From the NCBI RefSeq assembly GCF_002113885.1, contig NW_018405900.1, forward strand, positions 1,349,392 to 1,413,391: 64,000 nt of DNA, in the 5' to 3' direction. Below are positions 4,501-52,245 of this stretch, one piece after another. Origin of the DNA: Mizuhopecten yessoensis. Its lineage: Eukaryota. A model generated the notes under the pieces. The model worked only from the letters and a program-made list of their open reading frames with translations, was not told the DNA's origin and searched no databases. Position 1 is the stretch's first letter; the number at the start of each line of letters is the position of its first letter. The position numbers and the translations under genes are program-made.

Positions 4501-5575
4501 CTACAACTCGAAATAAATCATAAAGTACGACACTATCGTAAGCATTTACAGTCTAACCGCGCACTTCCCTCTAAATCACAGTCGACCATTATTCAGTAGC
4601 ACGTCGTTCGTTGATGATAATGGCCGCGACAGTCACGCAGTAGCTGAATCAGCTCGATATTCCATCTAGGAACACACAGCACAAGCAGGCACAACCACAC
4701 AAATGAATCCTCAATCAACCAACAATATTACACCGGGATTCTTTGGAAATTCGACATTTACCGGCTGTAGTTTCTCTTTTAATCACATATAAAAACCTCC
4801 CGCCTGAAACCAATTTCAACTGCTTTTCCACAGGTGCAACTAACTACCGGATCGCTTCATCGTATTCCCCTCCTCACTAGCAAGCTTATATAAGCAAAAT
4901 AACCACTACCATCCAAAAATATTTTCCGTATTATGTAAGAATATTATATTATGTGAATTGCATATGTTTACTGATTAAATCGTATCGATATTTTTGTGTT
5001 TATTTCCACAAACTATTTTTTTACAGTGAAAGTCTTGACTACATTTGGAGAGCAATTCCATGAACTGTTCTACTTATTTAACAAACGCCGCGAAATGGGA
5101 ATTTAAGAGTGCGTTTTGAACTTGGAAATGCATATATTTGCATTTTGTATTGTTTTACGGCCCACCGACAATTTGAGTCTTTTAGGGCCAAACAACAATG
5201 TAAAAAATAGACATTCACAAAAAAATGAATACATAAAATCCCGAAACAAGAGGTTAAAATGTCTAAAAGTTGTCAAAATATCTCAATAGCAAACGAATTG
5301 CTTATAAAATATTTCATATCATACTAGAGAGATTAATTGAATGTAAAGAATCATCGATTGATTGCACAGAAACTGTGACGAATAAACTTTTCATTGAAGG
5401 TACACAATCTGTCACGTATTTGTTTGATATCAGCGCAGTCAATCATAAAGTGTTTGACTGTAATTGGTTGATCGCACGCATGACAATAAGGTTGTTCTTC
5501 CATTTGTAAAATGTAGCTATGTGTGATGTAGGTTTTGCCTATGCGTGATCGCGAGAGGACAATTTCCTCTCTGCG

Positions 5576-5770
5576 GTTTGGTTTGGTTAAATTTTGTTTT
5601 ACGTCCTATTAACGGCTAAAGTCATTTAAGGACTTGCTTTCGTGTGTGTTGTGTATGCAAGCTTGCGTGTGTGCATGCAGGACACAGGGTATGTTTGGGT
5701 GCTTGCCTCCTTGTGATAGCGCGGATCTGATGCCGACTTTATATTGCTATCTCACTGAAATACTATGCGA
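5576..5770 (-). mobile_element. SINE family A, 3' fragment
   Basis: (GGTTT)n tail plus acgtcctattaacggctaaagtcatttaaggac...gcgcggatctgatgccgactttat. Confidence 0.7.
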
Positions 5771-6432
5771 ATTATCAAGCAGTGGATTCTGGTAAGGGAC
5801 TCAGTATGTCCAAGACAACTCTTTCAATGGGAGCTCCCAACAATGTATTGTGCCATATATCTTTGACATCCTTTCTGTGTTACCTAACGTTGTTGACAAT
5901 AAACGACAATTCATACATCGCTCTGTAAAGCTTGTCAAATAAAACCGTCATTGAACGCGTTCCAAAATTCTGTCCCGACTCTGGAAAATCATTTAGAGCT
6001 CTAGCACTTCTCGGTGCATCGAGCATAGACAATACTGCTCCGATTGGACAATACTGTAGCATTTACGGGGGTCGCATATTTCTAATATTCACTGAAGCGT
6101 TACAGTTATTATGAGTTCGTTACTGGGAGGAAGAAATATTTAGCTTCTTCGTCCCAGGTCGTCCCGACTCGGTTGATAAATAGAAAATATCTAAAATAAA
6201 GGCAAGATATGTTTACAAAGTTAGAAGAACTGATATAAAGTCAATAAATAAAGAATGGTATTTACAATGATAAAACAGATATGCCGTATCGCCCACTGGT
6301 CGGTCTAATATTGGACCTAAAACTCAGGCCAAGTTACTCCGAGACTGGGGCTTTCCCTAAGGATGTATCTGGGGAAAACCCCGCACGATGTCACCCAGAC
6401 GTTCAGGGAATTAAATTGGGGAAAAATTCGGG

Positions 6433-6542
6433 GTTTGATTTGGTTTGGTTTGGTTTAGTATTGTTAAACGTCCTATCAACAGCTATGGTCATTTAAAGAC
6501 GGTCTCCCCTGTGTACAAGATGCATGCATATAGTGTATGCGT
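6433..6542 (-). mobile_element. SINE family A tail, left half of the copy split by the AcademH insertion (continues 15482-15635)
   Basis: Joining 6542 to 15491 restores the SINE sequence seen in uninterrupted copies. Confidence 0.8.
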
Positions 6543-6744
6543 CAATCTAATTAAAATCAGATCTCTCATTACACTACATTATGGAGATCTGACGGAGCCC
6601 CATTGAAAACAGCGTTTCAGTGACCCGGGGTCAAATCATATTCAACCAATCAAATCACCGCTGCCAGGTTTCTGGATGTTTCCGCAAAAAGTGATAATAG
6701 AAAGCGATCGAGGGATATCGAAAGAACGTAACGAAGAAAAACAA

Positions 6745-9700
6745 ATGGCAGCGTCCATGTTGCAAAAGTCAACACCACGAAAAAAATGTTTCTCAGGTAA
6801 CTTATGTATAATATGCGGTTTCAATTTGACAAAAACAGAACCTTTAGAAGACGGGAGTAATATCAGTATTAAAGTTTTTGACAAAAAAAAGTAAAATTAA
6901 CTTCAGAAAGATGTTCAATAATTGAACAGGTGGTCGGAAAAAGTGTTTGGTCACTCCTGAGTACATTATAGAAGCAGCTGCTACACTTGTTTGCAAAGAA
7001 TGCAAGGCTTTGTGTAAACGCGGTTCATGATGTGTTTTGCGAGACAGAAGTTGTGATGGGACATGTGGGTTTACTTGGGACAAGCTTCATAAGAAATGTC
7101 AGGACCGATCACCCTATGCATTAAAACTTGAGTCATCCATGCTTGGCAGCACCAATTCAGAATCTGGAACTGTAAATTATTTACACAGCTTGGAAACAAT
7201 TAGTTCAGCACTTCATGGTAGAAATCCAGATATATCCTCCTTACAATACCAGATTGGGTTCATCCTGACATATGGAGGATGTAAGCAAAGGGTAAATGCA
7301 CATCCAATTTAGTAAGATTAGATCTGTCATTACTATATATACTGGTACATTTATGTATATTTACTGGGTGTGAAGAGGCAAATACACTTCAAGAGTTGTC
7401 TTGGGGTCATAAGGTTTTCAATATGGCAGACGGTGGCCATCTTGGATTCTGACTTTTGACGATTTCGCTACTTCTTAGTAACTAGGGATCTTGTCGGATT
7501 TTGACAGTTAAGACTTGTTATGCTACATCTCAGAAAGCACTGCTTGGATTGTTTTCTTCAAATTTGACATATTCCCCTTTTTCCAGTTTTGCTTGTTCAA
7601 TGTTGGCACTGATCGATGAGAAGAATATTCAGTGGCTATAAAGTTTGTTATTGCTGTTATTACAGTACTGTACTACACATTTTACATGTACGTTATCCAT
7701 GATCCGTAGTTGACTCTTTAATATTTGTGACCTTGCCTGTGACCACTTATAATATATGGGATATCTCTTTTAAACTGTAATGAGTAACATGAAACTGTAA
7801 TGTGTGAGCAATACAGGCAGCCTTGTTTATTTCTAAAGGATATTGAAAGACTTTCTAAGATGGGACTCTGCACTTCACCAAAGTCTATCCAGACCAAATT
7901 ACTTTCATGTGAAATGTTTCTGGATGCGGAAGTGTTGAAAATCAAGGAAGACTGGAATGAGGATGGATCAATAAAATCCCAGCTAATTGGTGACAACTGG
8001 GACAAAAACATCATTTCATCATAGCGAACATCTCAGGACAAGACAATTTCACTACATCTTTTTAACATGTATGCTTTGGTGGATAGGATCATTTCCATCA
8101 CCACTGCTGATGTGCATGAAACTGCGATGAAGTCAGTGGATGTCATTCCACCTGTTGAAGAGCAGGTCCTTCTTGGAAAGGAATTGACATTTGTTGTGGC
8201 TTCATCAGTCATTAGAAGCATAGAACAAATTCAGAAAGTGTTTGGATAAATTTACCCGACGCATCTACAGCACAAGTACAGCCAGCCAGGTCTAAAAACC
8301 AAGCAGGTATAGATTCTATTTTCTGTGTATGAGATATGAATTATTTATAATGGTGGACATAAGGATGCAATTTCATGTCAATAACCAAGGGGAGATAATT
8401 ATGAAGAGTTATGTCCCTTAGATGTAATCTCACTTGGGTACTGATATTGGGTTTTCCCACATGGTTTAAATGTACTGAGGTGGAAATTGTAATATGGAGT
8501 TATTGTTTTACTATGCAAGACCATCATTTTAGTATGAAGGTGAATTTTTATTATGGAGAAGCATCCATAGCAAAACAGGATTAATTATGCATTGTATAAA
8601 CTATGTTTGTAGGCGATCGATTGACAAGTGAAAGAATACAAGGAGCACAGCAGGCAATGTCAAATGCTGCTACAGGACTGAAGAGACTTCAAAGCTTCAT
8701 TTCAAATATTGAAGATTGGCATCGCATGATGAATATCATAATACATGTCTGTCCGTAGAAAAGTCTTGTCCGGACACACTCCTAAACTAGTGACCAATTT
8801 TAATGAAACTACACAGGAATGTTAGGGAACAAGTGTAGATGTGCATGTTGTTGTTTTTTGGTTTTTGTTTTGTTTTTTTAATTTGTTTTCCATGGTAACC
8901 AGGTTGGTGTACAAAAGTGTTTGTGTTAAATATTGTCCCGTCAAATCCTCCTAAACTAGTGAACCAATTTTAATGAAACTACACAGGAATGTTAGATGTG
9001 AACGCGGCTTTTTGGTTGTTTTTTTTGGCCATGGGGGTGTTATTTTACTAACTACTTACTAGTTGGCTAACTGCTATCGACTTAGTTCTAGTTCAGGCTT
9101 GTCCTAAAGCATATACTCAAGTCATATCATTGTTTGTTTTTATTTTGCTACTATCTACTCAAGATCTGGCATACCGATTGAGATTTATTTTGTTTTTATT
9201 ACCAAAGATGCCAACACATTTTGAGTAGCAGAGTTTCAGATTAAAACCTCAATAAACCATTACTTTTCCTGGCAATAGCCAAGCAGACATATGACACCAC
9301 ATCTGCAGCTGACAGGGGGACACCTTGCTTTCTTCGGCACCTCCTAAATTTACGCAGTGTTAAAGGACAAGTGAAAAATTCATTCAGAGCTTACAAGCAT
9401 CTATATTACACCATATTTGATGGCATTTGTTGGTTGCTCTTTCTAAGGGAAATTAATAAAACCAATCTTGATGACCAAATTGAATTTCCAGAGAAATTTG
9501 AAGAGAAAAATGACAGTGAGAAGAATGCATGGCTTGATGAAGTGTGTGAAAATGTGGTTAGAAATTGGTTTTTTGGCGACGGCAATGATATTGTGGACGA
9601 GGTGAGGAAAGTGTGTGAGGATCCAAACCACCCAAAAACTATTGGGTAGCAAATATTCAAGATGGCCAATTCCATTTCTGTGGAAAAACCTATGCCTGTG

Positions 9701-10087
9701 AAGAAACATTGAAAGCCCATGAGAAGATAAAGCATCATTATTTTGTCCATACCAGGAAGCCCAAGAAGTCAAAGAGCAATAAAGATGAATTGTACAACTA
9801 TATATTGTTATTGTTTAAGCTAACCGCTCTACTTCGAAACTTAGACACTGCTATTGACATGGCGGATGGAGAAAGAGTTGTACGGTCAGCGAAATATGAA
9901 CTCCCTATCTTCAACAAAACAAGAAAAACTAAGTATGCCATCGGATGTGTTCACCTAACTGCAATGGCTGAAGAAATATTGTTGCCGGAACAACGGCCTA
10001 TCGATGTGTGAATCTTCAAGGTGGCAAGAACAATGATGTTGCATTAGATGAATACCTTGAAATGCTGAACAGAGACAGTAAGGAAAT
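6745..10087 (+). pseudogene. AcademH transposase (DUF6589-like), multi-exon, with stops and frameshifts
   Basis: Fragments LQYQIGFILTYGGC, IERLSKMGLCTS, LIGDNWDKNI...LHLFN, GDRLTSERIQGAQ...IEDWHRMMNI, a C2H2-like CGKTY...H, ADGERVVRSAKYELPIF..TRKTKYAIGC and DVALDEYLEMLNR; GT-AG boundaries such as CAAAGG|GTAAAT and AAGCAG|GTATAG. Confidence 0.75.
8745..9005 (+). repeat. Dispersed repeat fragment with an internal duplicated block (ctcctaaactagtgaccaattttaatgaaactacacaggaatgttag x2), Helentron/HINE-core-like
   Basis: Direct duplication at about 8779 and 8949, interrupting the transposase. Confidence 0.5.
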
Positions 10088-11761
10088 AGATCATTTTCAC
10101 AATCGCTGTTCGTGATTGTCTCCCCTGCCACTGTAATATTCAAAACAAGGCGCGGGATGTAAGGCTGATTTCCGGTGGCAAACACGTGAAGACCAGGCTA
10201 AAATGGCATAGCGCATCAACAATATGTAGACGAAATCTCACATTGACATCGATGCCAATCATGACCACTTGTTTCGGTAAGTACATATTGTAAATGAATT
10301 CAAGTAAAGAGGTGTGATATTATGACCGTATCAATGATATCACGCTGTTTACCTGGGAGCACACGTTTCACAGAGCACAGCCACAGACGTGCACATAGCT
10401 ACTTCAAAGTGTTGTAAATAAGTCATTTCCGTAGCCGGCAATATCACCTACTTGGAAATTCGTACTATTACCGGTATATGACGGCAGTTAAATATATCTA
10501 CCTGTCCTTTAAGTCAGATGATAATTAATCACATGCGATCGCCTGCAGTGCCCCGGTCTCTGCATGTAATCGGTCTTACCTGTAAACATGTAAACTTGAA
10601 CATCGCTACTCGTAATCGCAGCCAAACTACTTAAGTCTTTGTCGACATTCATTCCATGGTCTTAGATATATGATTATTAATTCAATACGTCACTTGGATT
10701 GGCAAGATTATTTATTTGCATTATCATCAAATTATGGCCATTGGCATATTGAAAAAAAAAATGAGCTGAATGGATCCATTTTCTCTCTCATTTCTCCGAT
10801 AATGTTTTTTGTTTGGTCTTATATCACACAACATTGTGAGATTTACCAATACTATGTGGATTGCAATAAGACTTTTAGTCTGTTTATATTGTTCATATGT
10901 CAAAGGTGCCTCCAATATACTGACATAGTCTAACACGCGTGTATCTGTGACATGTGTATTGTACAACACACATACATTTTTGTATCAAGTGTCATGAATT
11001 TGCCAGTCAAGCGAAATACATTAGACGTATCCAGAATATGAAAGGGATTTTTCTAAATTTCAGATGACGTATGAAATAAAACAAAAATCTAACATGTAAT
11101 GTGAATAATTTCACTTACATGGCAAATATAGAAACAAAATTCTTAAATAATTTTGATTTGATTAGGTAATTCATACGTTGTATGAAATAATCAAATCATA
11201 AATAAATAGGCTAGTGCATGTATATAAGCCATATATGACATATTTTTATATATCGGATGAGTTGTTTAATAATAAATTCCACTTGCGTTAAATTTAAGTA
11301 AATTAAAATGAGTATATATACATTGTACAATGTAAATATATCCCAATCAGATTAACATGTGAAATCCGACATCCTGTGGGACACATATTTCTGGTCAGAT
11401 GAACCTGTCTTATCCAACACCCTGTGGGACACAACAGATTATTGTATTAGATGCTGTATCAATCACAGCTGCAGGGGTCTATTTCCTATGATAATGGGGT
11501 AATTGATGCATAAAGTCAAAACAAACATATTTTAGGACTTGTCAAATCTTTAGGTTAAAGTGTATGTGCAAGAGTTGAAATTCAATAAACATAACATTTG
11601 ATGTTTCACAGTTTGTACTGGGGTTTTTTAATTTTTATATTTATCATTTTCATATAAAAACCTTTTAAATACAATAAAGTTAAAACAAATGAAAATTATC
11701 AATCAGAGAGCTAGGGATATTATTTCTAATATGATATATTTCTTATATTTACAGATGGATC

Positions 11762-12449
11762 TAGTCCGAATTATTCTGACGTTTTAACGACTTTTTTCAT
11801 ATCGGTCTGTCGTCGATTAACGTCAGAACTCCGGCCCTCTATAATATGCGGGAAATATGCGACCCGGAGCGCACTTCAAACTGATATTTTAGAAACAAAT
11901 CGTCACTTTCACACACATGTCGCATATGGATCGAAAGATCTATTCTTTATGCACTAGGTGGTATCAATAACATCTTTCAAAGATCATTACGAAAAGCATT
12001 TTCCAACGTTTTCTATACCAACCCATGTTTTTTATGGAAATTAGGCCATGAGAAATGTCACATGACTTGACGAGATCACGCGTTACCGAAGGTATTTCCC
12101 AACGTTATGACGTAGGCCGGCGAGATTTTAGTCACGTGGCTTTGGAAGGCGGGGCTATCAAAAACCTAGAGTAAAACAGAGTAAGTTTGAAAAAATATGT
12201 TTTTAGTGATTGTATTAGTTGTTTGAGGCATGTTATGTATGTGTATCTTGTGCATAAAGAATAGATCTTTCGATCCATGTGCGACATGTTTGTGAAAGTG
12301 ACGATTTGTTTCTAAAATATCAGTTTGAAGTGCGCTCCGGGCGCGGGTCGCATATTTCCCGCATATTATATAGAGGGCCGGAGTTCTGACGTTAATCGAC
12401 GACAGACCGATATAAAAAAGTCGATAAAACGTCAGAATAATTCGGACTA
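11762..12449. mobile_element. Non-autonomous MITE (688 bp) with about 195-bp TIRs and 9-bp TSD; Academ-like TAG...CTA termini
   Basis: TAGTCCGAATTATTCTGACG... / ...CGTCAGAATAATTCGGACTA; TSD AGATGGATC at 11753-11761 and 12450-12458. Confidence 0.9.
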
Positions 12450-12451
12450 AG

Positions 12452-13308
12452 ATGGATCCAACAAGGCCTAAACCTTTACGAGGGAAGCAGTGCTGTGTTT
12501 TTGGGTGTATGCATTTTTATTTTTTTTTGCCAGCGGGATTAGAGACAAAGCATTTTTTTTCAATATAACCAAGTCTGTGCTTGAATCAAAAAACAAAAAA
12601 GGACAGATGGTGTACTTTGATAAAAAGACAGGATGGCAGGGATGGATTTTCATTTTACAAGAAAACAGTCATCTGCGAGGACCATTTCTGCCCAGATCAG
12701 ATTCATGTTTCTCTGGTTACCAGAAAATGGACCCTGAAATCAGGTGAGGAGCCATCTGAATTTTAATGGAAAACTTAAGCTGTTCCCCGAAAAGAACCAA
12801 AGGAAATGGAATGAATTTAGGTCACCTTTAGGAAATAAAGCTGTCAACGACCAGATAAGGGATTGTGCAGGTAATTGGAATGAGACACATGTACCTCAGA
12901 CATTCAAAGAGGTGGGAACACAGACAGACCTAGACATTATTTCCCCTATGGATCCACCAGTTGTTGAAGACAATGAACATAGCTACAATGAAAACATTGT
13001 AGAGATCATGTTGCAACTAATATTGTATCTCATTTAAAAGATACAATTGACAGTCTCACTCGACAGGTTGACAAGCTACACATGAAGCAAAAAACAATGT
13101 CAAATACCATCACTGACCTTCATAATCAATGGGCCTTCTTTGAATCCAACAGATTTGAAATAGACAAAGTTAAAGAGGATAAAAACGCTATGCTTTTTTT
13201 ACGGGATTTCAAAACTATGGTGTTTCAGGTCTGTCTTTGAATATTTGGAACCAAAAGCCAAAAATCTACAGTACTGGCGTGGTACAGGAGAAACAGGTGA
13301 ACCAAAAC
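12452..13308 (+). pseudogene. THAP-domain transposase N-terminus (ISL2EU/Harbinger-like), frameshifted and truncated before the DDE domain
   Basis: MDPTRPKPLRGKQCCVFGC...DRWCTLIKR...VICEDHF...LKSGEEPSEF (THAP C2CH), then a coiled coil and TGFQNY..VFEYLEPKAKNLQYWRG. Confidence 0.75.
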
Positions 13309-13735
13309 TCAAATGGTAATCAAAGCTATTTTGCCATTCTTAGATATTTTTAAATAAAATTTTGGATCCCGGCAGGCTTCTTCTACAGTATAACCCAATT
13401 TGCTGAATGGGCATTTGCATTCCAGTCCACCATTTTGGTTTTCCACAGTTGGGTCGTATACACGACCATCCAAACGTGCACCAATCCCAGACCTGTCTTT
13501 CGATATAACTAGACCTGCTGCAGAGACAAACACATCACATCCCTCTTTCTGTTTTTCCTTCACATACGCTGCAATAGCATTTACCTCATTATCTTTCCCA
13601 AAGTCGATAGAACGTGTAGATGGATTTCAATACAATACTGATTGTAAAATACCATCTGGATTTTTACAACATTTTGAAAAATTTCCAAAATTAGATGATG
13701 TCATTTTGTGTTTATGTAAAAGTTTCCAATATTGA
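13309..13735 (-). pseudogene. YqaJ/lambda-exonuclease-like nuclease fragment (ISL2EU partner ORF)
   Basis: YWKLLHKHKMTSSNFG...FGKDNEVNAIAAY...GLVISKDRSGIGARLDGRV...GLECKCPF: YqaJ motifs including PD-(D/E)xK; one internal stop. Confidence 0.8.
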
Positions 13736-15006
13736 CAAGATAGCAGGATTGAGATATATTTTATTTGAATTTAACTGTTATATAAATATATACATATATG
13801 GTTTACATATATGATAGCATATGATACTGTAAATCTGTAAAACAATGGGGGAAAAAATAGATGAAATAGTAACGTTTTGTTAACTTTCAAGTGCAAGTGG
13901 ATTAGAAAAGTTAGATTGTCAAGAACTGAACAGGCCAAAGCGGGACTGAAGACAAAGTTTGCTGCTATCTAAAATCTGTTTAAATTTTGAATAAGTAAAA
14001 TAATTACGAAGAAGCAATAGTATGGAATCAAATCGAAATTTGCTGAAACTGCTGTCTCCAATGAACATCTCCTAATAAGGATTCGGGTTATGCAAAGATG
14101 AGGTCTACATCACCATTTCTGATGCAATTATTTTTCTGTCGCTCACTATACCTATATGTTAATCATCATCGTACGTAGACACCCATTTATTATTCTGATT
14201 TGTTCCTCCCTGTCCCCCAACTTCTTTCCTACATACAATGCATACAATTCAGGAAGCAATATGGGGAGCAATATGCAGATGAGAAGACTCCCTACTATTT
14301 TTATATATAATTAAAAATGGAAATCCAATGCATAACAAATCTATCATTTCTATCTTGCAGACTAATATAAAATTGAATACATGAACACCACCAAGAAGTA
14401 GTTGCCTCTTCACAAGACGACCAGTCTTTCAACGAGGCCAATACCTGCGAATTACCAATCAACTTATTCGGGGCCGTAGCTCATTGTCCGATTATATCAC
14501 TTTATCATCAGATGATGTGATAGCAAATGTTCGGTTTCGGGTATTTACCAAAATGGACCGGAGTTGAATTACCGAAATGGAGGGAAATGGGCTTTAAATT
14601 GGCATTATTGCAATAGAATGGGCCCTAATATGCATTCTTCGTCACCAACTGGAGTCATACGTAGAAAATTGGGCGTTAATTTTGTTTACATCTATTTTAA
14701 ATTAATTTTTCAAAATAACGCAATTCACGGTACGATCTTCGTTACCGAAATGGAGGGCACTGGGCCTTAAATTGGCATTATTTCTAGAGAATGGACCCAT
14801 ATAGGCATTTTTTATAACCCAAGAGAGCTAGATGTAACATATAGGTAGTTAAATTTGACTGGAAATAATTTTAATAGCTGTTTAAACGTAATAATATTGT
14901 TTGACTTTCAAGGTCACAGGGGTCAATTCAACTCCATCTCGGTAAATACCCTCTATAACCAACACCCCAAATGATATTTTGAAACATCTATACATATATA
15001 TATACC

Positions 15007-15318
15007 TTTATATTCAGCTGTTAGCCCTTCGATATTTTTTAACTTGGACACCTGGTCCTCCATCAGTCCCACCAACGGCGAACAGATCAAAACTTTGCAT
15101 AAATCGAGCTCCTGTCCAACTGTTATCTCGCGCTTCACCGAAGGCAACATCTGGTACGGTAAAGATTTACCGAAATCAGTCAGTAAAATTGCCATGCAGT
15201 CTCTCCCATTCAACAGACAGTCCAGTATTCCTCTTTGTTCCTTCTTCAGATTTTCTATTTTGAACCTGTTCACGATCTTTCTAAATGCAGAATCTATTAC
15301 ATCGTCCTTTGTCACCAT
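15007..15318 (-). pseudogene. RecQ-like SF2 helicase N-terminal exon of AcademH (remainder deleted)
   Basis: LKKEQ (motif 0), GRDCMAILLTDFGKSLPYQ (degenerate Walker A), ICSPLVGLMEDQV (motif Ia); ends at a donor AAAG|GTATAT; starts about 80 nt inside the right TIR. Confidence 0.85.
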
Positions 15319-15677
15319 CTTGTTTACGAACAATCCAAGCGTCTGAGAGAAAATCAATCTCATTGGATGATAATGGATGACCTATGCTTATTAGAAAATG
15401 TCACTGGAACGCTGTTTCCAATGGGGCTCCGTCAGATCTCCATAACGTAGTGTAATGAGAGATCTGATTTTAATTAGATTGTGTATGCGTGTGTGTTTTG
15501 GGAGGTGCGATATGTTCTTGTTTGTCTCCTTGTGATAGCGCGGAACTGATGCCGACTTTATAATGCTATCTCACTGAAACAAACTGTCGAAGACACCCAG
15601 CAGGACACATTATACTGACAACGGTGAACCAGTCAACAATAGTGACAACTATGAAAAAATTAATAAATATATATACT

Positions 15678-16172
15678 TCATTTAAGGACGTGTGTGTTAT
15701 GTATGCGCTTATGTGTGTCGGAGGGTATAATGGTGTATTTGCCTCCTGGTCATAGCACGGATCTGATGCCGACTTTATAGTGCTATCTCACTGAAATACT
15801 ATGCCGAAGGCACCAAGCACAGCAGAACATTAAGCAGGGAATAGCAAGTACCATTTTTAAGGACTTTGGTATGTCCCGGCCTGGGAACATAACCCTTTGC
15901 CTTTCCCACCTGGGCGGAGGCTCATCACGAAAGCCAAAATTGAGGTTTTGCCAAGCAAGAGTCTAGGAAATGAAAGGTAGTTTAGAAAGACATATACAGA
16001 TCCAAAATATTTCGGAGAGTGTACATATGTAGCAGATTTATTTTGGGCGCTTTTGTATCCCCAAGTGGAGGACACAAAAACAAAATCCCAATGCTGCAGG
16101 GTGTCGCATATTAGTCGCCTCTTCCAATACATGCTTAGGGTTACAGCTTTACTCAATCCCCCGACCTGCAGG
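15678..16172 (-). mobile_element. SINE family A copy including the 5' accessory module
   Basis: Reverse complement of the 17.7 kb and 51.1 kb copies (ggactttggtatgtcccggcctggg, ttagtcgcct, cccgacctgcagggg). Confidence 0.7.
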
Positions 16173-17719: not shown

Positions 17720-18256
17720 CCCCTGTTTGAACTCCCTGCAGAATTGGGGATTTCTATTTGAGGACACAAAACGACCAAAAAAAACCTGCTTCACCCATTG
17801 CAATTTTGAGGGATCTTCATCTTTCTTTCTGCTTCTACATGTAACTACCTTTTATTTCCTAACGCCTTGCTTGGCAGCACCTCTTTTTTGACGTTCGCCC
17901 AGGTGAGGAAGGCAATGGGTTCTGTCCCCAGGCCGGGACATGCCAAAGTCCTTAAACATGGTAGTTGTAATTCCCTGCTTAACGTTCAGCATTTAGGGGA
18001 ATGGCAACTACTGGTTCACCCGTTGTCAGGACTTACCAGACGGAATGCTGTTCTGGTTGCCTTCGGCATGATATTTCAGTAAGATAGCACTATAAAGTCG
18101 GCATCAGATCCGCGCTATTACAAGTAGGCAAGTACACTAACATATCCCGTCTCCAGCACACATACACGCATGCTTACACAACATACACGGAGGCACGTCC
18201 TTAATTACATTAGGTGTTACTATGACGGTAAACAAAATAAACCAAACCAAACCAAA
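17720..18256 (+). mobile_element. SINE family A, near full-length (tRNA-like head, Meta/MESC-like domain, (AAACC)n tail)
   Basis: gttcgcccaggtgaggaaggcaatgggttctgtccccaggccgggacatgccaaagtc..atggtagttg..ccctgcttaacgttcagcatt; ends aaaccaaaccaaacc. Confidence 0.75.
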
Positions 18257-18712
18257 TCTTAGCTATCTTTTCGAAATACTATTCATTACGATTATTTCTA
18301 TGTATTGTAAGCTAAAGTTATAATAAATTTATAAATATTTACCAATAACTGTTTATAACCTTTCAAAATATTTGACCCGTCATCCTCGATTTCGTTGATA
18401 TTGTGACGTCATTGTTTGAAGTAATTACTTTACTCGACATCAATAATTATAACTACCAACCACCAATTACATCTATTTGAAAAGTGATTGTTAACATCAA
18501 GCAAAAATGGAATATCAAGGTTTTAGCATTATTTTTTGTTGTTTTGTTTGTATCTCTTTAGATTAAACAAGCAAATAGAAGAAAGGACATACATTCTCTG
18601 TCTGATTACATTGAGGAAATCAAGAATACACGTGTTGTGTCCCACTACATATCGTAAAAGGCGACTAATGTGGGGCTGCAGAATCGGGAGTTCTCTTCTG
18701 TGTCCTCTACAA

Positions 18713-40654: not shown

Positions 40655-40885
40655 CCCGTTGTCATTATAGTGTGACCGGGCGAAATGCTGTGCTGGTTGT
40701 CTTCGGCACGGTATTTCAGTGAGGTACATGTAGCACTATAAAGTCGGCATCAGATCTGCGTTATCACAAGAAGGCAAGTACACCAACATACCCTGTTCCG
40801 GCACTCATACACACATGTACGCATACACAACACACATGAAGGCACGTCATTAAACGACCTTAGCTGTTAATAGGACATTAACTAA
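40655..40885 (+). mobile_element. SINE family A, 3' half
   Basis: cccgttgtcattatagtgtgaccgg...aagtcggcatcagatc...agctgttaataggac..aaacaaaac. Confidence 0.72.
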
Positions 40886-42703
40886 ATAAAACAAAACAAA
40901 ACCAACTGCCTATCGATTGCCTTACATAGTCACTCGATCTTTTACTGAATAGCGTATGCATGTACAGTTTTTGTGAATCCAAATTACTTCAGTTTCACTG
41001 ACGATGACTCAATATTGTCGACATAGTCTGTTTCAAGGATAGTAGTTAGGTTCATAAAGTAGAATATACCTACAACGAATCAATCCATACATTATTTATA
41101 ATTACGGAATTCAATGGGTTTAAAGTCCTATTATTGGCTAGGCCTATACCGTTCAATTTCGTTTCAAAGGCCTTCAGACGCAGGTTTGCACTACACGAGA
41201 ATGCAAACAGATCGAGTTAAAGGCGCATTGTCTGCTGTTCTTGTGACGCCAAACTGTAGCATTTACATGAAGATTTCTTTATGGATTATTTTTAATATCG
41301 AATTTAAACACGAATTAAATGTCTGACTCATATATGTCTCATAAATATGGTTTTTATTTCAACAAAATCAAATGTATTTCAACACAATGAACAGGAACAA
41401 CCAAAACAGCGAAGGGAATACATAACACATCTACATCGTCGTCTAATAACATATATTTACATTCCCTCTGCAAGTCCTTTCGCAAACACTATTTAAACAA
41501 ATTGAGTTCATTATATGTATGTTATAACACAAATTGATCCGAGTCACTTTCTATGACTGCATTTGGCTCATTTTCATTTTTCTCGAATAACGTTAAATCA
41601 TCGTAAGAATCAGACATCCGGTGACGTAAGGCTGCTCCAATCATATAGTCTGCCGGTGACGTAAGGCTGCTCCAATCATATAGTCTGAATTACGATGCAT
41701 ACAATTTAATACTTCAAACAGCAACATTTTTTTTTATTATTTGGTATATCATCATGACGATATGAACAGAAATCGGTTACATCTATTAATTCCTATATAA
41801 TTCTAACGTGAACTTAATATATTACATTTTACAGGAACATATGCTGCAAAATGATTAGTGATAAAACTACATCACCATGCCTTGTAATATTCGTGTATGT
41901 ACGTAATACTTGATACCCGATAGCAGGTCTTACAATGCTACATACATATTGAACATTTAATGTCACCACGTCAATGTATGTTAGGTACTGTATTACATTG
42001 TACCATGTTTGAACTTTAGGCCTTGTGATTGGCCAATTAAGAATCTCCCTCTCGGGTAAAGATCCTCATATCCACGTACAACGGGATGAAAGAATATTTT
42101 TAACCAGCAAAAGTTTTTTAACTGACTCTTTAATCCGGAATTGAATCAACAAATACTTCATTTTACGAAACCTTCGTTATCCGTACTTTTTATCGGACTT
42201 ACTAGTCCGGATTAATAAGGTTCCTCTCTTAGTTCCGACATTGTTTCGGGTGGAACGTTTGAGTGGTTTTATATAATTTGGTTTCTATTTATGTTTACGT
42301 TAATGATATTCTACATGCACAACCTAACATTGTACATTAATGATGTCTTACTGTGCGGTACTTTCGTTTGATTTAACTCTGTTTTGAGAATTTTAAACAA
42401 TATAATGACTACTGTCGTTCTTTTCCTCACATATACATGTAACAGTTTACAAGTAAACACTATATACAACGTAATACAATACAATAGAAAGCGATACAAT
42501 ACATTACAGTTCATTGAATGTAATGCGTAACAATCGAACGGAAATATACATATTGCAAATAAATAACGTATATTCATGTTCACACTCAAATATCCTTACA
42601 CACATTTGACAACGGGTTCGGACAGGTCGGATAACAGAGTAAATGTACGAAACGTAAAACTTAAAACTTCAGAGCGATAATTTGTTTCACCATAATTGGT
42701 TAT

Positions 42704-51128: not shown

Positions 51129-52245
51129 ACACCCCTGCAGGTGGGGGATAGGGAAAATAATACACCTGCTGTTACCCACTGCATGTACATGTATCTTAGG
51201 AGGCGATTAATGTGGGACACACACACCCCCTGCAGAATTGGGAATTTGCTTTGGTGTCCTCTATTAAGGGGGACACAAAAGCGACCAAAATAAATTTGCT
51301 GCGCCCATTGCAATATTTGGGATCTTTATCTTTCTTTCTTCTTCTAACTACCTTTTATTTCCTAGCGCCTTGTCAATATTTCCTAGCGCCTTGCTTGGCA
51401 ACACCTCACTTTTGGCTTGATGGTTGAGCGTTCGCCCAGGTGAGGAAGGTAATGGGTTCTGTCCCCAGGCCGGGACATACCAAAGTCCATATGGTAGTTG
51501 TTATTCCCTGCTTAACGTTCAACATTAAGGGGAATGGCAACAACTGGTAAACCCGTTGGCGGATTGGTTGAGTGGTTAACACTTGGGATTTCCACGCAGG
51601 CGGCCGGGGTTCGATCCCCGAAGTCGTCGCACGCATAGAATATCAGAGAAAGTGGCTTTCTCCTGCCCACACAACTCCAACAACCCAGGTGGAGTATACA
51701 ATGGTCTGGGGTGGATGTTGCGGTATCTGTGATGTAGCATTCAAGTATAAACGATGCCGTTGGAAGCACGGTCCCACTACAAACAGAACACAACTAAATC
51801 CAGCACACACGCAGGCATACACACACAGGGAGATATTAGCCAGGTGGCATAGGACTAGTAGTTAGCGCCTTATAAGGCAGCTCCTGCGAATTCCTCAAAA
51901 ATTGTATATTCTGATTGTATTAATTGTATATCTATGTACTGCTAAGCGCTTAAGAGTGGCTTATGTTAGCTAGATAGGGCGCTGTATCAAATGCTGTATA
52001 TTACTATTATTATTATTATAATGTGACCGGTCAGAATGCTGTGATGGGTGCCTTCGGCATGGTATTTCAGTGACATAACACTATATAAAGTCGGCATCAG
52101 ATCCGCGTATCACAAGGAGGCAAGTACACCAACATAGCCTGTTTCCTGCATACACACACGCAAGCACGCATACAATACACACATGGAGGTAAGTCCTTAA
52201 ATGACCTTAGCTGTTAATAGGAAGTTAAACAAAATAAAACCAAAC
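51129..52245 (+). mobile_element. SINE family A, full-length with 5' module, interrupted by a second SINE
   Basis: 5' module, head ggcttgatggttgagcgttcgccc..gggttctgtcccc, Meta-like domain, body resumes at ataatgtgaccgg (about 52017), tail aaacaaaataaaacc. Confidence 0.8.
51558..52016 (+). mobile_element. tRNA(Gly)-like headed SINE with an L2-like (ATT)n tail, nested in SINE A
   Basis: ggcggattggttgagtggttaacac..ttccacgc..ccggggttcgatccccg (A and B boxes, TCC-like loop); tail aagcgctt..ggcgctgtatcaaatgc..tattattattatt. Confidence 0.75.

What the first reader, a model, noticed from the sequence alone, without database searches (positions are those of the whole stretch)
6534..15490. AcademH transposon with both ends and TSD intact, splitting a SINE
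Seen: 82-bp TIRs, an exact 9-bp TSD, a DUF6589-like transposase reading inward from the left end and a RecQ-like helicase reading inward from the right end. Removing the element restores a SINE A copy. Established: transposase + RecQ-like SF2 helicase + about 9-bp TSD defines AcademH. The CAATC terminus differs from the TAG terminus of the nested MITE. The RecQ-like ORF should not be annotated as a host RecQ gene.
Basis: partly seen in the sequence, partly recalled or inferred. Interest (0 to 1): 0.7.

Follow-up and report, generated by a model that had tools for sequence, protein, structure and literature searches.

The report
Dead helicase-carrying transposon copy in scallop
This 8.9-kb stretch of the Yesso scallop genome is a real but long-dead copy of a known kind of jumping gene (transposase plus RecQ-like helicase, AcademH type): its ends are intact, both of its genes are wrecked, so it is an ordinary genomic fossil.

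Summary
The window has 82-nt terminal inverted repeats (6543-6624 / 15400-15481, 96%). An exact 9-bp target-site duplication, TGTATGCGT, flanks them. Removing the element rejoins a ~215-bp interspersed repeat.

The interpretation (AcademH-type DNA transposon) is supported in kind. The genome has 11 loci where a DUF6589-type transposase faces a RecQ-like helicase. Relatives also make 9-bp duplications.

The copy is not intact:
- The transposase gene has three in-frame stops and two frameshifts, and has lost its last ~110 codons.
- Only exon 1 of the helicase and a broken exon 2 remain; the Helicase_C half is gone.
- About 3.9 kb of unrelated DNA fills the centre: THAP and YqaJ fragments and a nested MITE.

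The nested MITE belongs to the same superfamily. It has its own 9-bp duplication, and its arm is the terminus of another transposase+helicase element. Its TAG terminus matches curated bivalve Academ consensus sequences. The outer element's CAATC terminus marks a sister lineage.

The "second copy" 15 kb upstream is a segmental duplication, not a new insertion. Academ elements are already known to be abundant in bivalves, and this scan noted the same kind elsewhere in this genome. Verdict: a new member of a known kind, of low interest.

The parts
6437..6542 (.). Left half of the interrupted ~215-bp interspersed repeat (SINE-like, class unverified). Its last 9 bases (6534-6542) are the left TSD copy TGTATGCGT.
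   Evidence: The empty-site reconstruction aligns across the junction with repeat copies at 5575-5760, 18053-18258, 40691-40905 and 52042-52245, and with L033 and L039.
6543..6624 (+). Left terminal inverted repeat, starting CAATCTAATTAAAATC.
   Evidence: 82 nt, 96%. The terminal ~44 nt recur at 90-98% (mostly 93-98%) in dozens of places, usually as back-to-back pairs that look like ~85-bp mini-MITEs.
6746..10112 (+). Transposase pseudogene (DUF6589 type). Mapped exons are ~6977-7282, 7833-8309, 8600-8752 and 9272-10112. In-frame stops at 7028, 8022 and 8247. Frameshifts at ~9631/9634 and ~9981/9993. The last ~110 codons are missing. The ATG at 6746 is my reading of the sequence and is not verified.
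   Evidence: tblastn with bivalve homologues P0030 and P0074; Pfam; paralogue ORFs. The stops are shared with the segmental duplicate L002 but absent in fragments L033 and L034.
10113..14030 (.). Foreign central DNA that replaces the 3' parts of both convergent genes. It is low-copy, with pieces collinear with C5376:573513-600145 and C1809:1231147-1231406.
   Evidence: No match to the paralogue transposase C-terminus or the Helicase_C exon. DNA matches.
11762..12449 (.). Nested palindromic MITE (TAGTCC...GGACTA) with its own exact 9-bp TSD AGATGGATC (11753-11761 / 12450-12458). It is a deletion derivative of another DUF6589+helicase family.
   Evidence: Its arm matches the terminus of the C76736 element (L079:1928-2274, 92.6%), next to that element's helicase ORF. 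23 of 27 other copies have perfect 9-bp TSDs.
12569..12763 (+). THAP-domain fragment, part of the foreign DNA.
   Evidence: Pfam THAP, E 6.6e-5.
13312..13626 (-). YqaJ-like exonuclease fragment, part of the foreign DNA. Its only close relative is a degraded copy at C5376.
   Evidence: Pfam YqaJ, E 4.2e-5. The own-genome search gave 5 matches, none beside a DUF6589 match.
14031..14147 (-). Remnant of helicase exon 2, interrupted by stop codons.
   Evidence: tblastx to paralogues C2904, L069, L070 and L071; stops seen.
14539..14951 (.). Another interspersed repeat (MITE-like, 29-nt imperfect inverted ends) sitting between helicase exons 1 and 2.
   Evidence: I6; many genomic copies at 85-92%.
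14995..15363 (-). Helicase exon 1: the N-terminal ~120 residues, covering roughly the first 70 of 167 positions of the Pfam DEAD profile. This is the only intact-looking coding piece.
   Evidence: Pfam DEAD; RecQ, BLM and WRN are the best solved-structure hits; 47-62% identity to paralogue exon 1.
15400..15481 (-). Right terminal inverted repeat, ending TTAATTAGATTG.
   Evidence: The same ...TTAATCAGATTG end is found in sister family B (C2904, C3823).
15482..15602 (.). Right TSD copy TGTATGCGT (15482-15490) followed by the right half of the interrupted interspersed repeat.

Best explanation
The stretch 6543-15481 is a decayed, non-autonomous copy of a two-gene cut-and-paste DNA transposon of the Yesso scallop. 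When intact, the family carries a DUF6589-type (presumed DDE) transposase gene reading in from one end. It carries a RecQ-like SF2 helicase gene reading in from the other end. This is the AcademH architecture.

Shown:
- The element inserted once into a short interspersed repeat, with a 9-bp staggered cut that gave the TSD TGTATGCGT.
- Afterwards the transposase gene picked up three stop codons and two frameshifts.
- The facing 3' parts of both genes were lost and about 3.9 kb of unrelated low-copy DNA took their place.
- A MITE from a sister family landed in that DNA, again with a 9-bp duplication.
- The left flank plus the first 2 kb of the element were copied about 15 kb upstream by a segmental duplication.

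Inferred:
- The transposase binds the conserved CAATCTNATTAAAAT termini and carries out cut-and-paste transposition.
- The helicase assists, in a role that is not known.
- This copy could move only if a related intact element supplied the proteins in trans. The many near-identical ~85-bp mini-MITEs with the same termini suggest such a source was active not long ago.
For: - TIRs and TSD.
- Empty-site restoration.
- A 150-bp derivative (L040) has the same termini and a 9-bp TSD, AGAGCTGTC.
- Gene remnants and lesions.
- Eleven loci pair DUF6589 with a helicase in convergent orientation: C2573, C3823, C2904, C76734, C4871, C5574, C3849, C1199, C76736, C5527 and C4968.
- Paralogue helicases carry DEAD and Helicase_C. 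RecQ-family proteins are among their best solved-structure matches, and for the TAG-lineage paralogue they fill the whole top of the list.
- The terminal motif is conserved in sister family B.
- A sister-family MITE made 9-bp TSDs in 23 of 27 copies.
- Literature: AcademH makes 9-10 bp TSDs and encodes a helicase (PMC10045372). Academ elements are expanded in bivalves (PMC10294476). Curated bivalve Academ consensus sequences start with TAG or TAGTCC, like the MITE and its DUF6589+helicase parent.
- The stops are shared with the duplicated segment.
Against: - No Repbase or Dfam AcademH sequence was available, so the equation of DUF6589 with the Academ transposase is indirect.
- The AlphaFold model of a full-length homologue was poor over the N-terminal catalytic half, and Foldseek found no DDE transposase. 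The DDE fold is therefore not shown here.
- None of 49 readable curated bivalve Academ consensus sequences begins with CA, so the outer element's terminus is atypical.
- No intact copy of this exact family was found in the assembly.
- The frameshifts could in principle be assembly errors. The three stops recur in the duplicate, however, and the missing exons cannot be explained that way.
Confidence: 0.82

Rival explanations
1. It is an intact, potentially autonomous AcademH element. The fragmentary ORFs are just exons separated by introns.
For: Both ends and the TSD are perfect. The transposase is indeed multi-exonic in relatives. The conserved motifs GDNWDKN, GDRLT and LDEY are still readable.
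Against: - Stops lie inside aligned exon sequence at 7028, 8022 and 8247.
- Two frame changes fall inside what is one continuous 405-417-aa exon in paralogues.
- There is no match at all to the last ~110 transposase residues or to the Helicase_C exon.
- Helicase exon 2 contains stops.
Confidence: 0.02
2. It is a Mutator-like (MULE) or other 9-bp-TSD transposon that merely picked up a helicase gene fragment. The helicase would then be cargo, not part of the machinery.
For: MULEs also make 9-10 bp TSDs and have long TIRs (established knowledge). In this copy the helicase is only a fragment, and other foreign gene fragments (THAP, YqaJ) are also inside.
Against: No MULE or Mutator Pfam family matched any piece or any full-length homologue; only DUF6589 did. 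The helicase partner recurs in the same position and orientation at ten other loci, across families only 35-55% identical. That is not what random capture gives.
Confidence: 0.08
3. It is not one element. Two independent copies of the abundant short MITE happen to flank ordinary host DNA in inverted orientation.
For: The terminal 44 nt of the TIR are common in the genome as mini-MITEs. The interior is a patchwork.
Against: The inverted repeat runs 82 nt, beyond the 44-nt mini-MITE arm. An exact 9-bp duplication flanks the outer ends only. Removing the whole 8939 bp restores a continuous repeat copy. The interior starts and ends with the two family genes in the expected orientation.
Confidence: 0.02
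4. It is a Kolobok-type element. KolobokH carries RecQ, KolobokE carries a lambda-exonuclease-like nuclease, and Kolobok transposases carry THAP.
For: RecQ-like, YqaJ-like and THAP pieces all occur inside the element. Kolobok lineages with such accessory genes are described in PMC9587614.
Against: The TSD is 9 bp and is not TTAA (the 4-bp TTAA target of Kolobok is from my own knowledge). The THAP and YqaJ pieces lie on opposite strands in the foreign central block. They do not recur beside DUF6589 or helicase matches elsewhere. KolobokH is reported from fungi only.
Confidence: 0.02

Closest known systems
AcademH lineage of the Academ superfamily (Kojima 2020, Mobile DNA 11:15; paper not held here, features cited through PMC10045372)
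   Same: - A transposase plus a separately encoded RecQ-like SF2 helicase.
- 9-bp TSDs: here, in a 150-bp derivative, and in 23 of 27 copies of a sister-family MITE.
- TIRs present.
- No XPG nuclease.
- Low copy number of long elements.
   Different: This copy is defective. Its CAATC terminus differs from the TA/TAG start of all 49 readable curated bivalve Academ consensus sequences. A direct sequence comparison with Repbase AcademH entries could not be made.
Curated bivalve Academ elements of Martelossi et al. 2023 (PMC10294476)
   Same: Same host group. That paper reports a bivalve-specific Academ expansion, 100 curated full-length consensus sequences and a mean length of 5.6 kb. The nested MITE and its parent at C76736 share their TAGTCC start.
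   Different: The outer element belongs to a lineage with other termini. At 8.9 kb it is inflated by foreign DNA. The held copy of the library is cut and shows no scallop entry.
AcademX (transposase fused to XPG nuclease, 3-4 bp TSD)
   Same: Presumably the same transposase superfamily.
   Different: The TSD is 9 bp, not 3-4 bp. No XPG_I match lies near any DUF6589 match in this genome.
Mutator-like elements (MuDR/MULE)
   Same: 9-10 bp TSDs, long TIRs, frequent internal gene fragments.
   Different: No MULE transposase domain. A conserved helicase partner gene.

Membership tests
AcademH | Transposase of the Academ (DDD/E) type | tested here: inconclusive
   - The transposase remnant and its full-length bivalve homologues match Pfam DUF6589 only.
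- No Repbase Academ protein was available.
- Indirect link: the TAGTCC-ended MITE arm is the terminus of a DUF6589+helicase element, and curated bivalve 'Academ' consensus sequences start with TAG or TAGTCC.
- The fold search gave nothing because the model was poor in the catalytic half.
AcademH | A helicase (RecQ-like SF2) encoded besides the transposase | tested here: met
   - Exon 1 here matches DEAD, and RecQ, BLM and WRN lead its solved-structure hits.
- Paralogues carry DEAD plus Helicase_C. One matches RecQ at E 2.7e-23.
- The pair recurs at 11 loci.
- In this copy only the N-terminal stub survives.
AcademH | Target-site duplication of 9 or 10 bp (PMC10045372) | tested here: met
   - Exact 9 bp here.
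- 9 bp in derivative L040.
- 9 bp for the nested MITE.
- Perfect 9 bp in 23 of 27 further MITE copies.
AcademH | Terminal inverted repeats | tested here: met
   82 nt, 96%. The terminal motif is conserved in sister family B.
AcademH | Phylogenetic placement of transposase and helicase within the published AcademH clade | not testable with these tools
   Repbase and Dfam sequences are not on hand, and the Kojima 2020 paper is not held.
AcademX | XPG nuclease fused to the transposase; 3-4 bp TSD | tested here: not met
   The TSD is 9 bp. No XPG_I match lies beside any DUF6589 match.
MuDR/MULE | MULE/Mutator transposase domain | tested here: not met
   Pfam scans of all pieces and of full-length homologues return DUF6589 only.
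Kolobok (KolobokH/E) | TTAA target-site duplication (from my own knowledge) | tested here: not met
   The TSD is TGTATGCGT, 9 bp.
Autonomous (intact) transposon | Open, complete transposase and helicase genes | tested here: not met
   Three stops, two frameshifts, a missing C-terminus and missing helicase exons.
SINE (for the interrupted host repeat) | tRNA-, 5S- or 7SL-derived head | tested here: inconclusive
   No Rfam or ARAGORN match in the window. Only the local, diverged copies were scanned.

The most novel reading that the evidence does not exclude
The CAATC-terminated elements (this family plus families B and C of the scallop, with relatives across bivalves) could be a distinct, not yet curated sublineage of AcademH. 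Its termini differ from the TAG start of all readable curated bivalve Academ consensus sequences. It has spawned ultra-short (~85-bp) mini-MITEs, and the 95-98% identity of most of them to this TIR points to recent mobility in a genome otherwise considered quiet.
Probability: 0.3. Interest if true: 0.4.

Novelty: new member of a known kind. Interest (0 to 1): 0.22.

Why it matters
The main value is for annotation.
- The helicase ORF (14953-15363) and the DUF6589 frames should be masked as transposon remnants. They should not be called host RecQ or C2H2 genes.
- NCBI currently lists paralogues only as 'uncharacterized protein'.

The locus also gives a clean, datable example:
- an insertion into a repeat;
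- a nested insertion by a sister family;
- a later segmental duplication.

The genome-wide pairing of DUF6589 with a RecQ-like helicase gives a functional context to a Pfam 'domain of unknown function'. None of this changes what is known about Academ transposons.

Tried and rejected
- Kojima's AcademH paper could not be read by DOI or PMC id.
- 'DUF6589' occurs in one held paper only, with no link to transposons.
- The supplements of two papers hold no DUF6589, RecQ or Academ-H term.
- AlphaFold2 on a 64-sequence alignment of homologues (P0030, 711 aa) gave pLDDT 69, with the N-terminal 300 residues under 50. Foldseek against PDB gave no hit below E 0.2. I drew no fold conclusion and ran no further fold searches.
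- I looked for XPG next to DUF6589 as a way to tie the domain to Academ. None was adjacent, so that link could not be made here; the absence is itself what AcademH predicts.
- The ESM Atlas returned only DUF6589 clusters.
The far ends of paralogues and the flanks of the mini-MITEs could therefore not be read.
- The big representative-protein search was not used, because the word search and family scans settled the protein family.
Pieces were searched separately by reference.
- The idea that YqaJ or THAP belongs to the element was rejected. They do not recur beside DUF6589 or helicase matches.
- The upstream 93% copy was first taken for a second insertion. It was rejected because 1.6 kb of left flank is duplicated with it.
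- A loose end in run X11 at 6513 resembles an empty site but differs in sequence. It most likely comes from another copy of the very abundant repeat.
Full report
**1. What is in the sequence**

The window comes from Mizuhopecten yessoensis. A paralogue's ORF is 100% identical to an NCBI protein of that species. The window is G000:C2573:1349392-1413391 in a 988-Mb assembly.

- An inverted repeat of 82 nt at 96% links 6543-6624 with 15400-15481.
- The nine bases before the left arm (6534-6542) and after the right arm (15482-15490) are both TGTATGCGT. The element starts CAATC and ends GATTG.
- I joined 6143-6542 to 15491-15890 in a script, which removes the element and one TSD copy. The result aligns without interruption across the junction. 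It aligns to four copies of a ~215-bp repeat elsewhere in the window (alignment shown). It also aligns to copies in loci L033 and L039, where the 9-mer occurs once.

So a single 8939-bp insertion into a pre-existing interspersed repeat is shown. The repeat is extremely abundant (depth table). It gave no tRNA or Rfam match, so 'SINE' remains a label.

**2. The two genes are remnants**

Pfam finds DUF6589 in + strand frames at 9245-10008. It finds DEAD in the - strand frame 14956-15381. Full-length bivalve homologues of the transposase (P0030, 711 aa; P0074, 726 aa) map to four blocks: ~6977-7282, 7833-8309, 8600-8752 and 9272-10112.

Lesions in the transposase gene:
- Inside aligned sequence there are stops at 7028, 8022 and 8247.
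- The last block changes frame twice, where paralogues have one open exon of 405-417 codons.
- Two residues of the C2H2-like motif are deleted.
- Nothing matches the last ~110 residues.

State of the helicase gene:
- Exon 1 (14995-15351; best solved-structure hits RecQ, BLM, WRN) is present.
- A 39-codon remnant of exon 2 (14031-14147) is present, and it contains stops.
- The Helicase_C exon of paralogues has no counterpart.

All pieces were searched apart.

**3. The centre is foreign**

Between 10113 and 14030 lie:
- DNA shared at 79-92% with C1809 and, collinearly but far more spread out, with C5376;
- a THAP fragment on the + strand;
- a YqaJ-like fragment on the - strand;
- a 688-bp palindromic MITE.

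YqaJ relatives are few and never lie beside DUF6589 matches. In sister family B the two genes end about 670 bp apart with nothing of this kind between them. The simplest reading is a deletion of both 3' halves together with the acquisition of filler DNA. A further repeat (14539-14951) sits between helicase exons 1 and 2.

**4. The family**

They do not. Searching the genome with the transposase piece, the helicase exon and the DUF6589 profile gives eleven loci. In each, a DUF6589 match and a helicase match lie 2-6 kb apart with their 3' ends facing. The loci are on C2573, C3823, C2904, C76734, C4871, C5574, C3849, C1199, C76736, C5527 and C4968. They span families whose helicases are only 35-55% identical.

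- Paralogue helicases have DEAD and Helicase_C.
- RecQ-family proteins are among their best solved-structure hits. One TAG-lineage paralogue matches RecQ at E 2.7e-23.
- Two copies of family B end, on the helicase side, with ...TTAATCAGATTG. This is nearly the window's ...TTAATTAGATTG, so the CAATC terminus is a conserved lineage feature.
- A 150-bp derivative (L040) has the same termini and a 9-bp TSD, AGAGCTGTC.
- The terminal ~44 nt occur in dozens of places at 90-98% (mostly 93-98%), mostly as back-to-back pairs. I read these as mini-MITEs. Their flanks could not be fetched.

**5. The nested MITE is kin**

- It has its own exact 9-bp TSD, AGATGGATC.
- Its 347-bp arm matches, at 92.6%, the terminus of the C76736 element. 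The match runs right up to that element's helicase ORF.
- Of 27 other copies, 23 have perfect 9-bp TSDs and the rest differ by 1-2 bases.

**6. Link to the literature**

- PMC10045372 states that AcademH makes 9-10 bp TSDs and AcademX 3-4 bp, and connects the difference to the encoded helicase versus nuclease.
- PMC10294476 reports a bivalve-specific expansion of Academ with 100 curated consensus sequences.
- In the held part of its library all 49 Academ entries start with TA, 45 with TAG, 13 with TAGTCC and none with CA.

The TAG lineage of DUF6589+helicase elements thus corresponds to published Academ. The outer element is a sister lineage with another terminus.

No XPG lies beside DUF6589 in this genome. 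A direct comparison with Repbase was impossible, and the fold prediction was uninformative.

**7. History**

- The 93% 'copy' 15 kb upstream shares 1.6 kb of left flank plus the element's first 2 kb. It carries the same three stops. It is therefore a segmental duplication made after insertion and after inactivation began.
- Independent fragments (L033, L034) have GGA at codon 7028.
- Runs from at least eight studies hold the junction region.
- Short contigs cross 6542|6543 without mismatch in three of four runs. They have only 23-28 nt on the element side, below the tool's 31-nt rule.

The insertion is probably old and widespread. That is not proven.

**8. Verdict**

The family call is probably right. 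The copy is a fossil. Other windows of this genome were already noted as AcademH-like by this scan. Those are unchecked AI notes, not independent evidence.

Noticed in passing
window 11762-12449; L003-L030; L079:1928-2274: The nested MITE family has at least 40 copies at 94-98% (all 40 scored candidates matched; one search gives lower bounds only). It is a two-arm deletion derivative of a DUF6589+RecQ-helicase element at C76736. 23 of 27 copies have perfect 9-bp TSDs.
   Followed up: yes
G000, e.g. C5572:1985832-1985919, C5544:81445-81525, C1925:308787-308873: There are dozens of ~85-bp structures made of two back-to-back ~44-nt copies of this element's TIR end, at 90-98% identity (mostly 93-98%). 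They are probably ultra-short MITEs of the CAATC lineage. Their flanks could not be fetched.
   Followed up: partly
G000:C2573:1337750-1341223 (L002), about 15 kb upstream of the element, outside the window: A segmental duplication at 92-93% covers window 4929-8552, that is the left flank plus the first 2 kb of the element. It includes the same three in-frame stops.
   Followed up: yes
window 10455-13738 versus G000:C5376:573513-600145: Five pieces of the central foreign DNA, including the YqaJ fragment, lie in the same order and orientation at C5376 but spread over 27 kb. The origin is unexplained (a gene or another element).
   Followed up: partly
L059+L068 (C2904:655295-661889) and L067+L058 (C3823:52748-58393): These are two 95-98% identical copies of sister family B, with an open 405-codon transposase exon in C2904 and DEAD plus Helicase_C helicase exons. 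The terminus ...TTAATCAGATTG is shared with the window element.
   Followed up: partly
window 11347-11440: This stretch resembles, at 78-85%, a ~48-bp unit that forms long tandem arrays elsewhere (for example C5347:451990-453599 and C76708:314039-318353). Tandem Repeats Finder reports no array at 11347-11440.
   Followed up: no
G000:C63140:86-557 (L032): A 557-bp contig is 100% identical to the left junction and the first 472 bp of the element. It is probably assembly redundancy.
   Followed up: no
window 5575-5760, 18053-18258, 40691-40905, 52042-52245, 15678-15824: These are further copies of the very abundant ~215-bp interspersed repeat that the element split. No tRNA-like head was detected.
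   Followed up: partly
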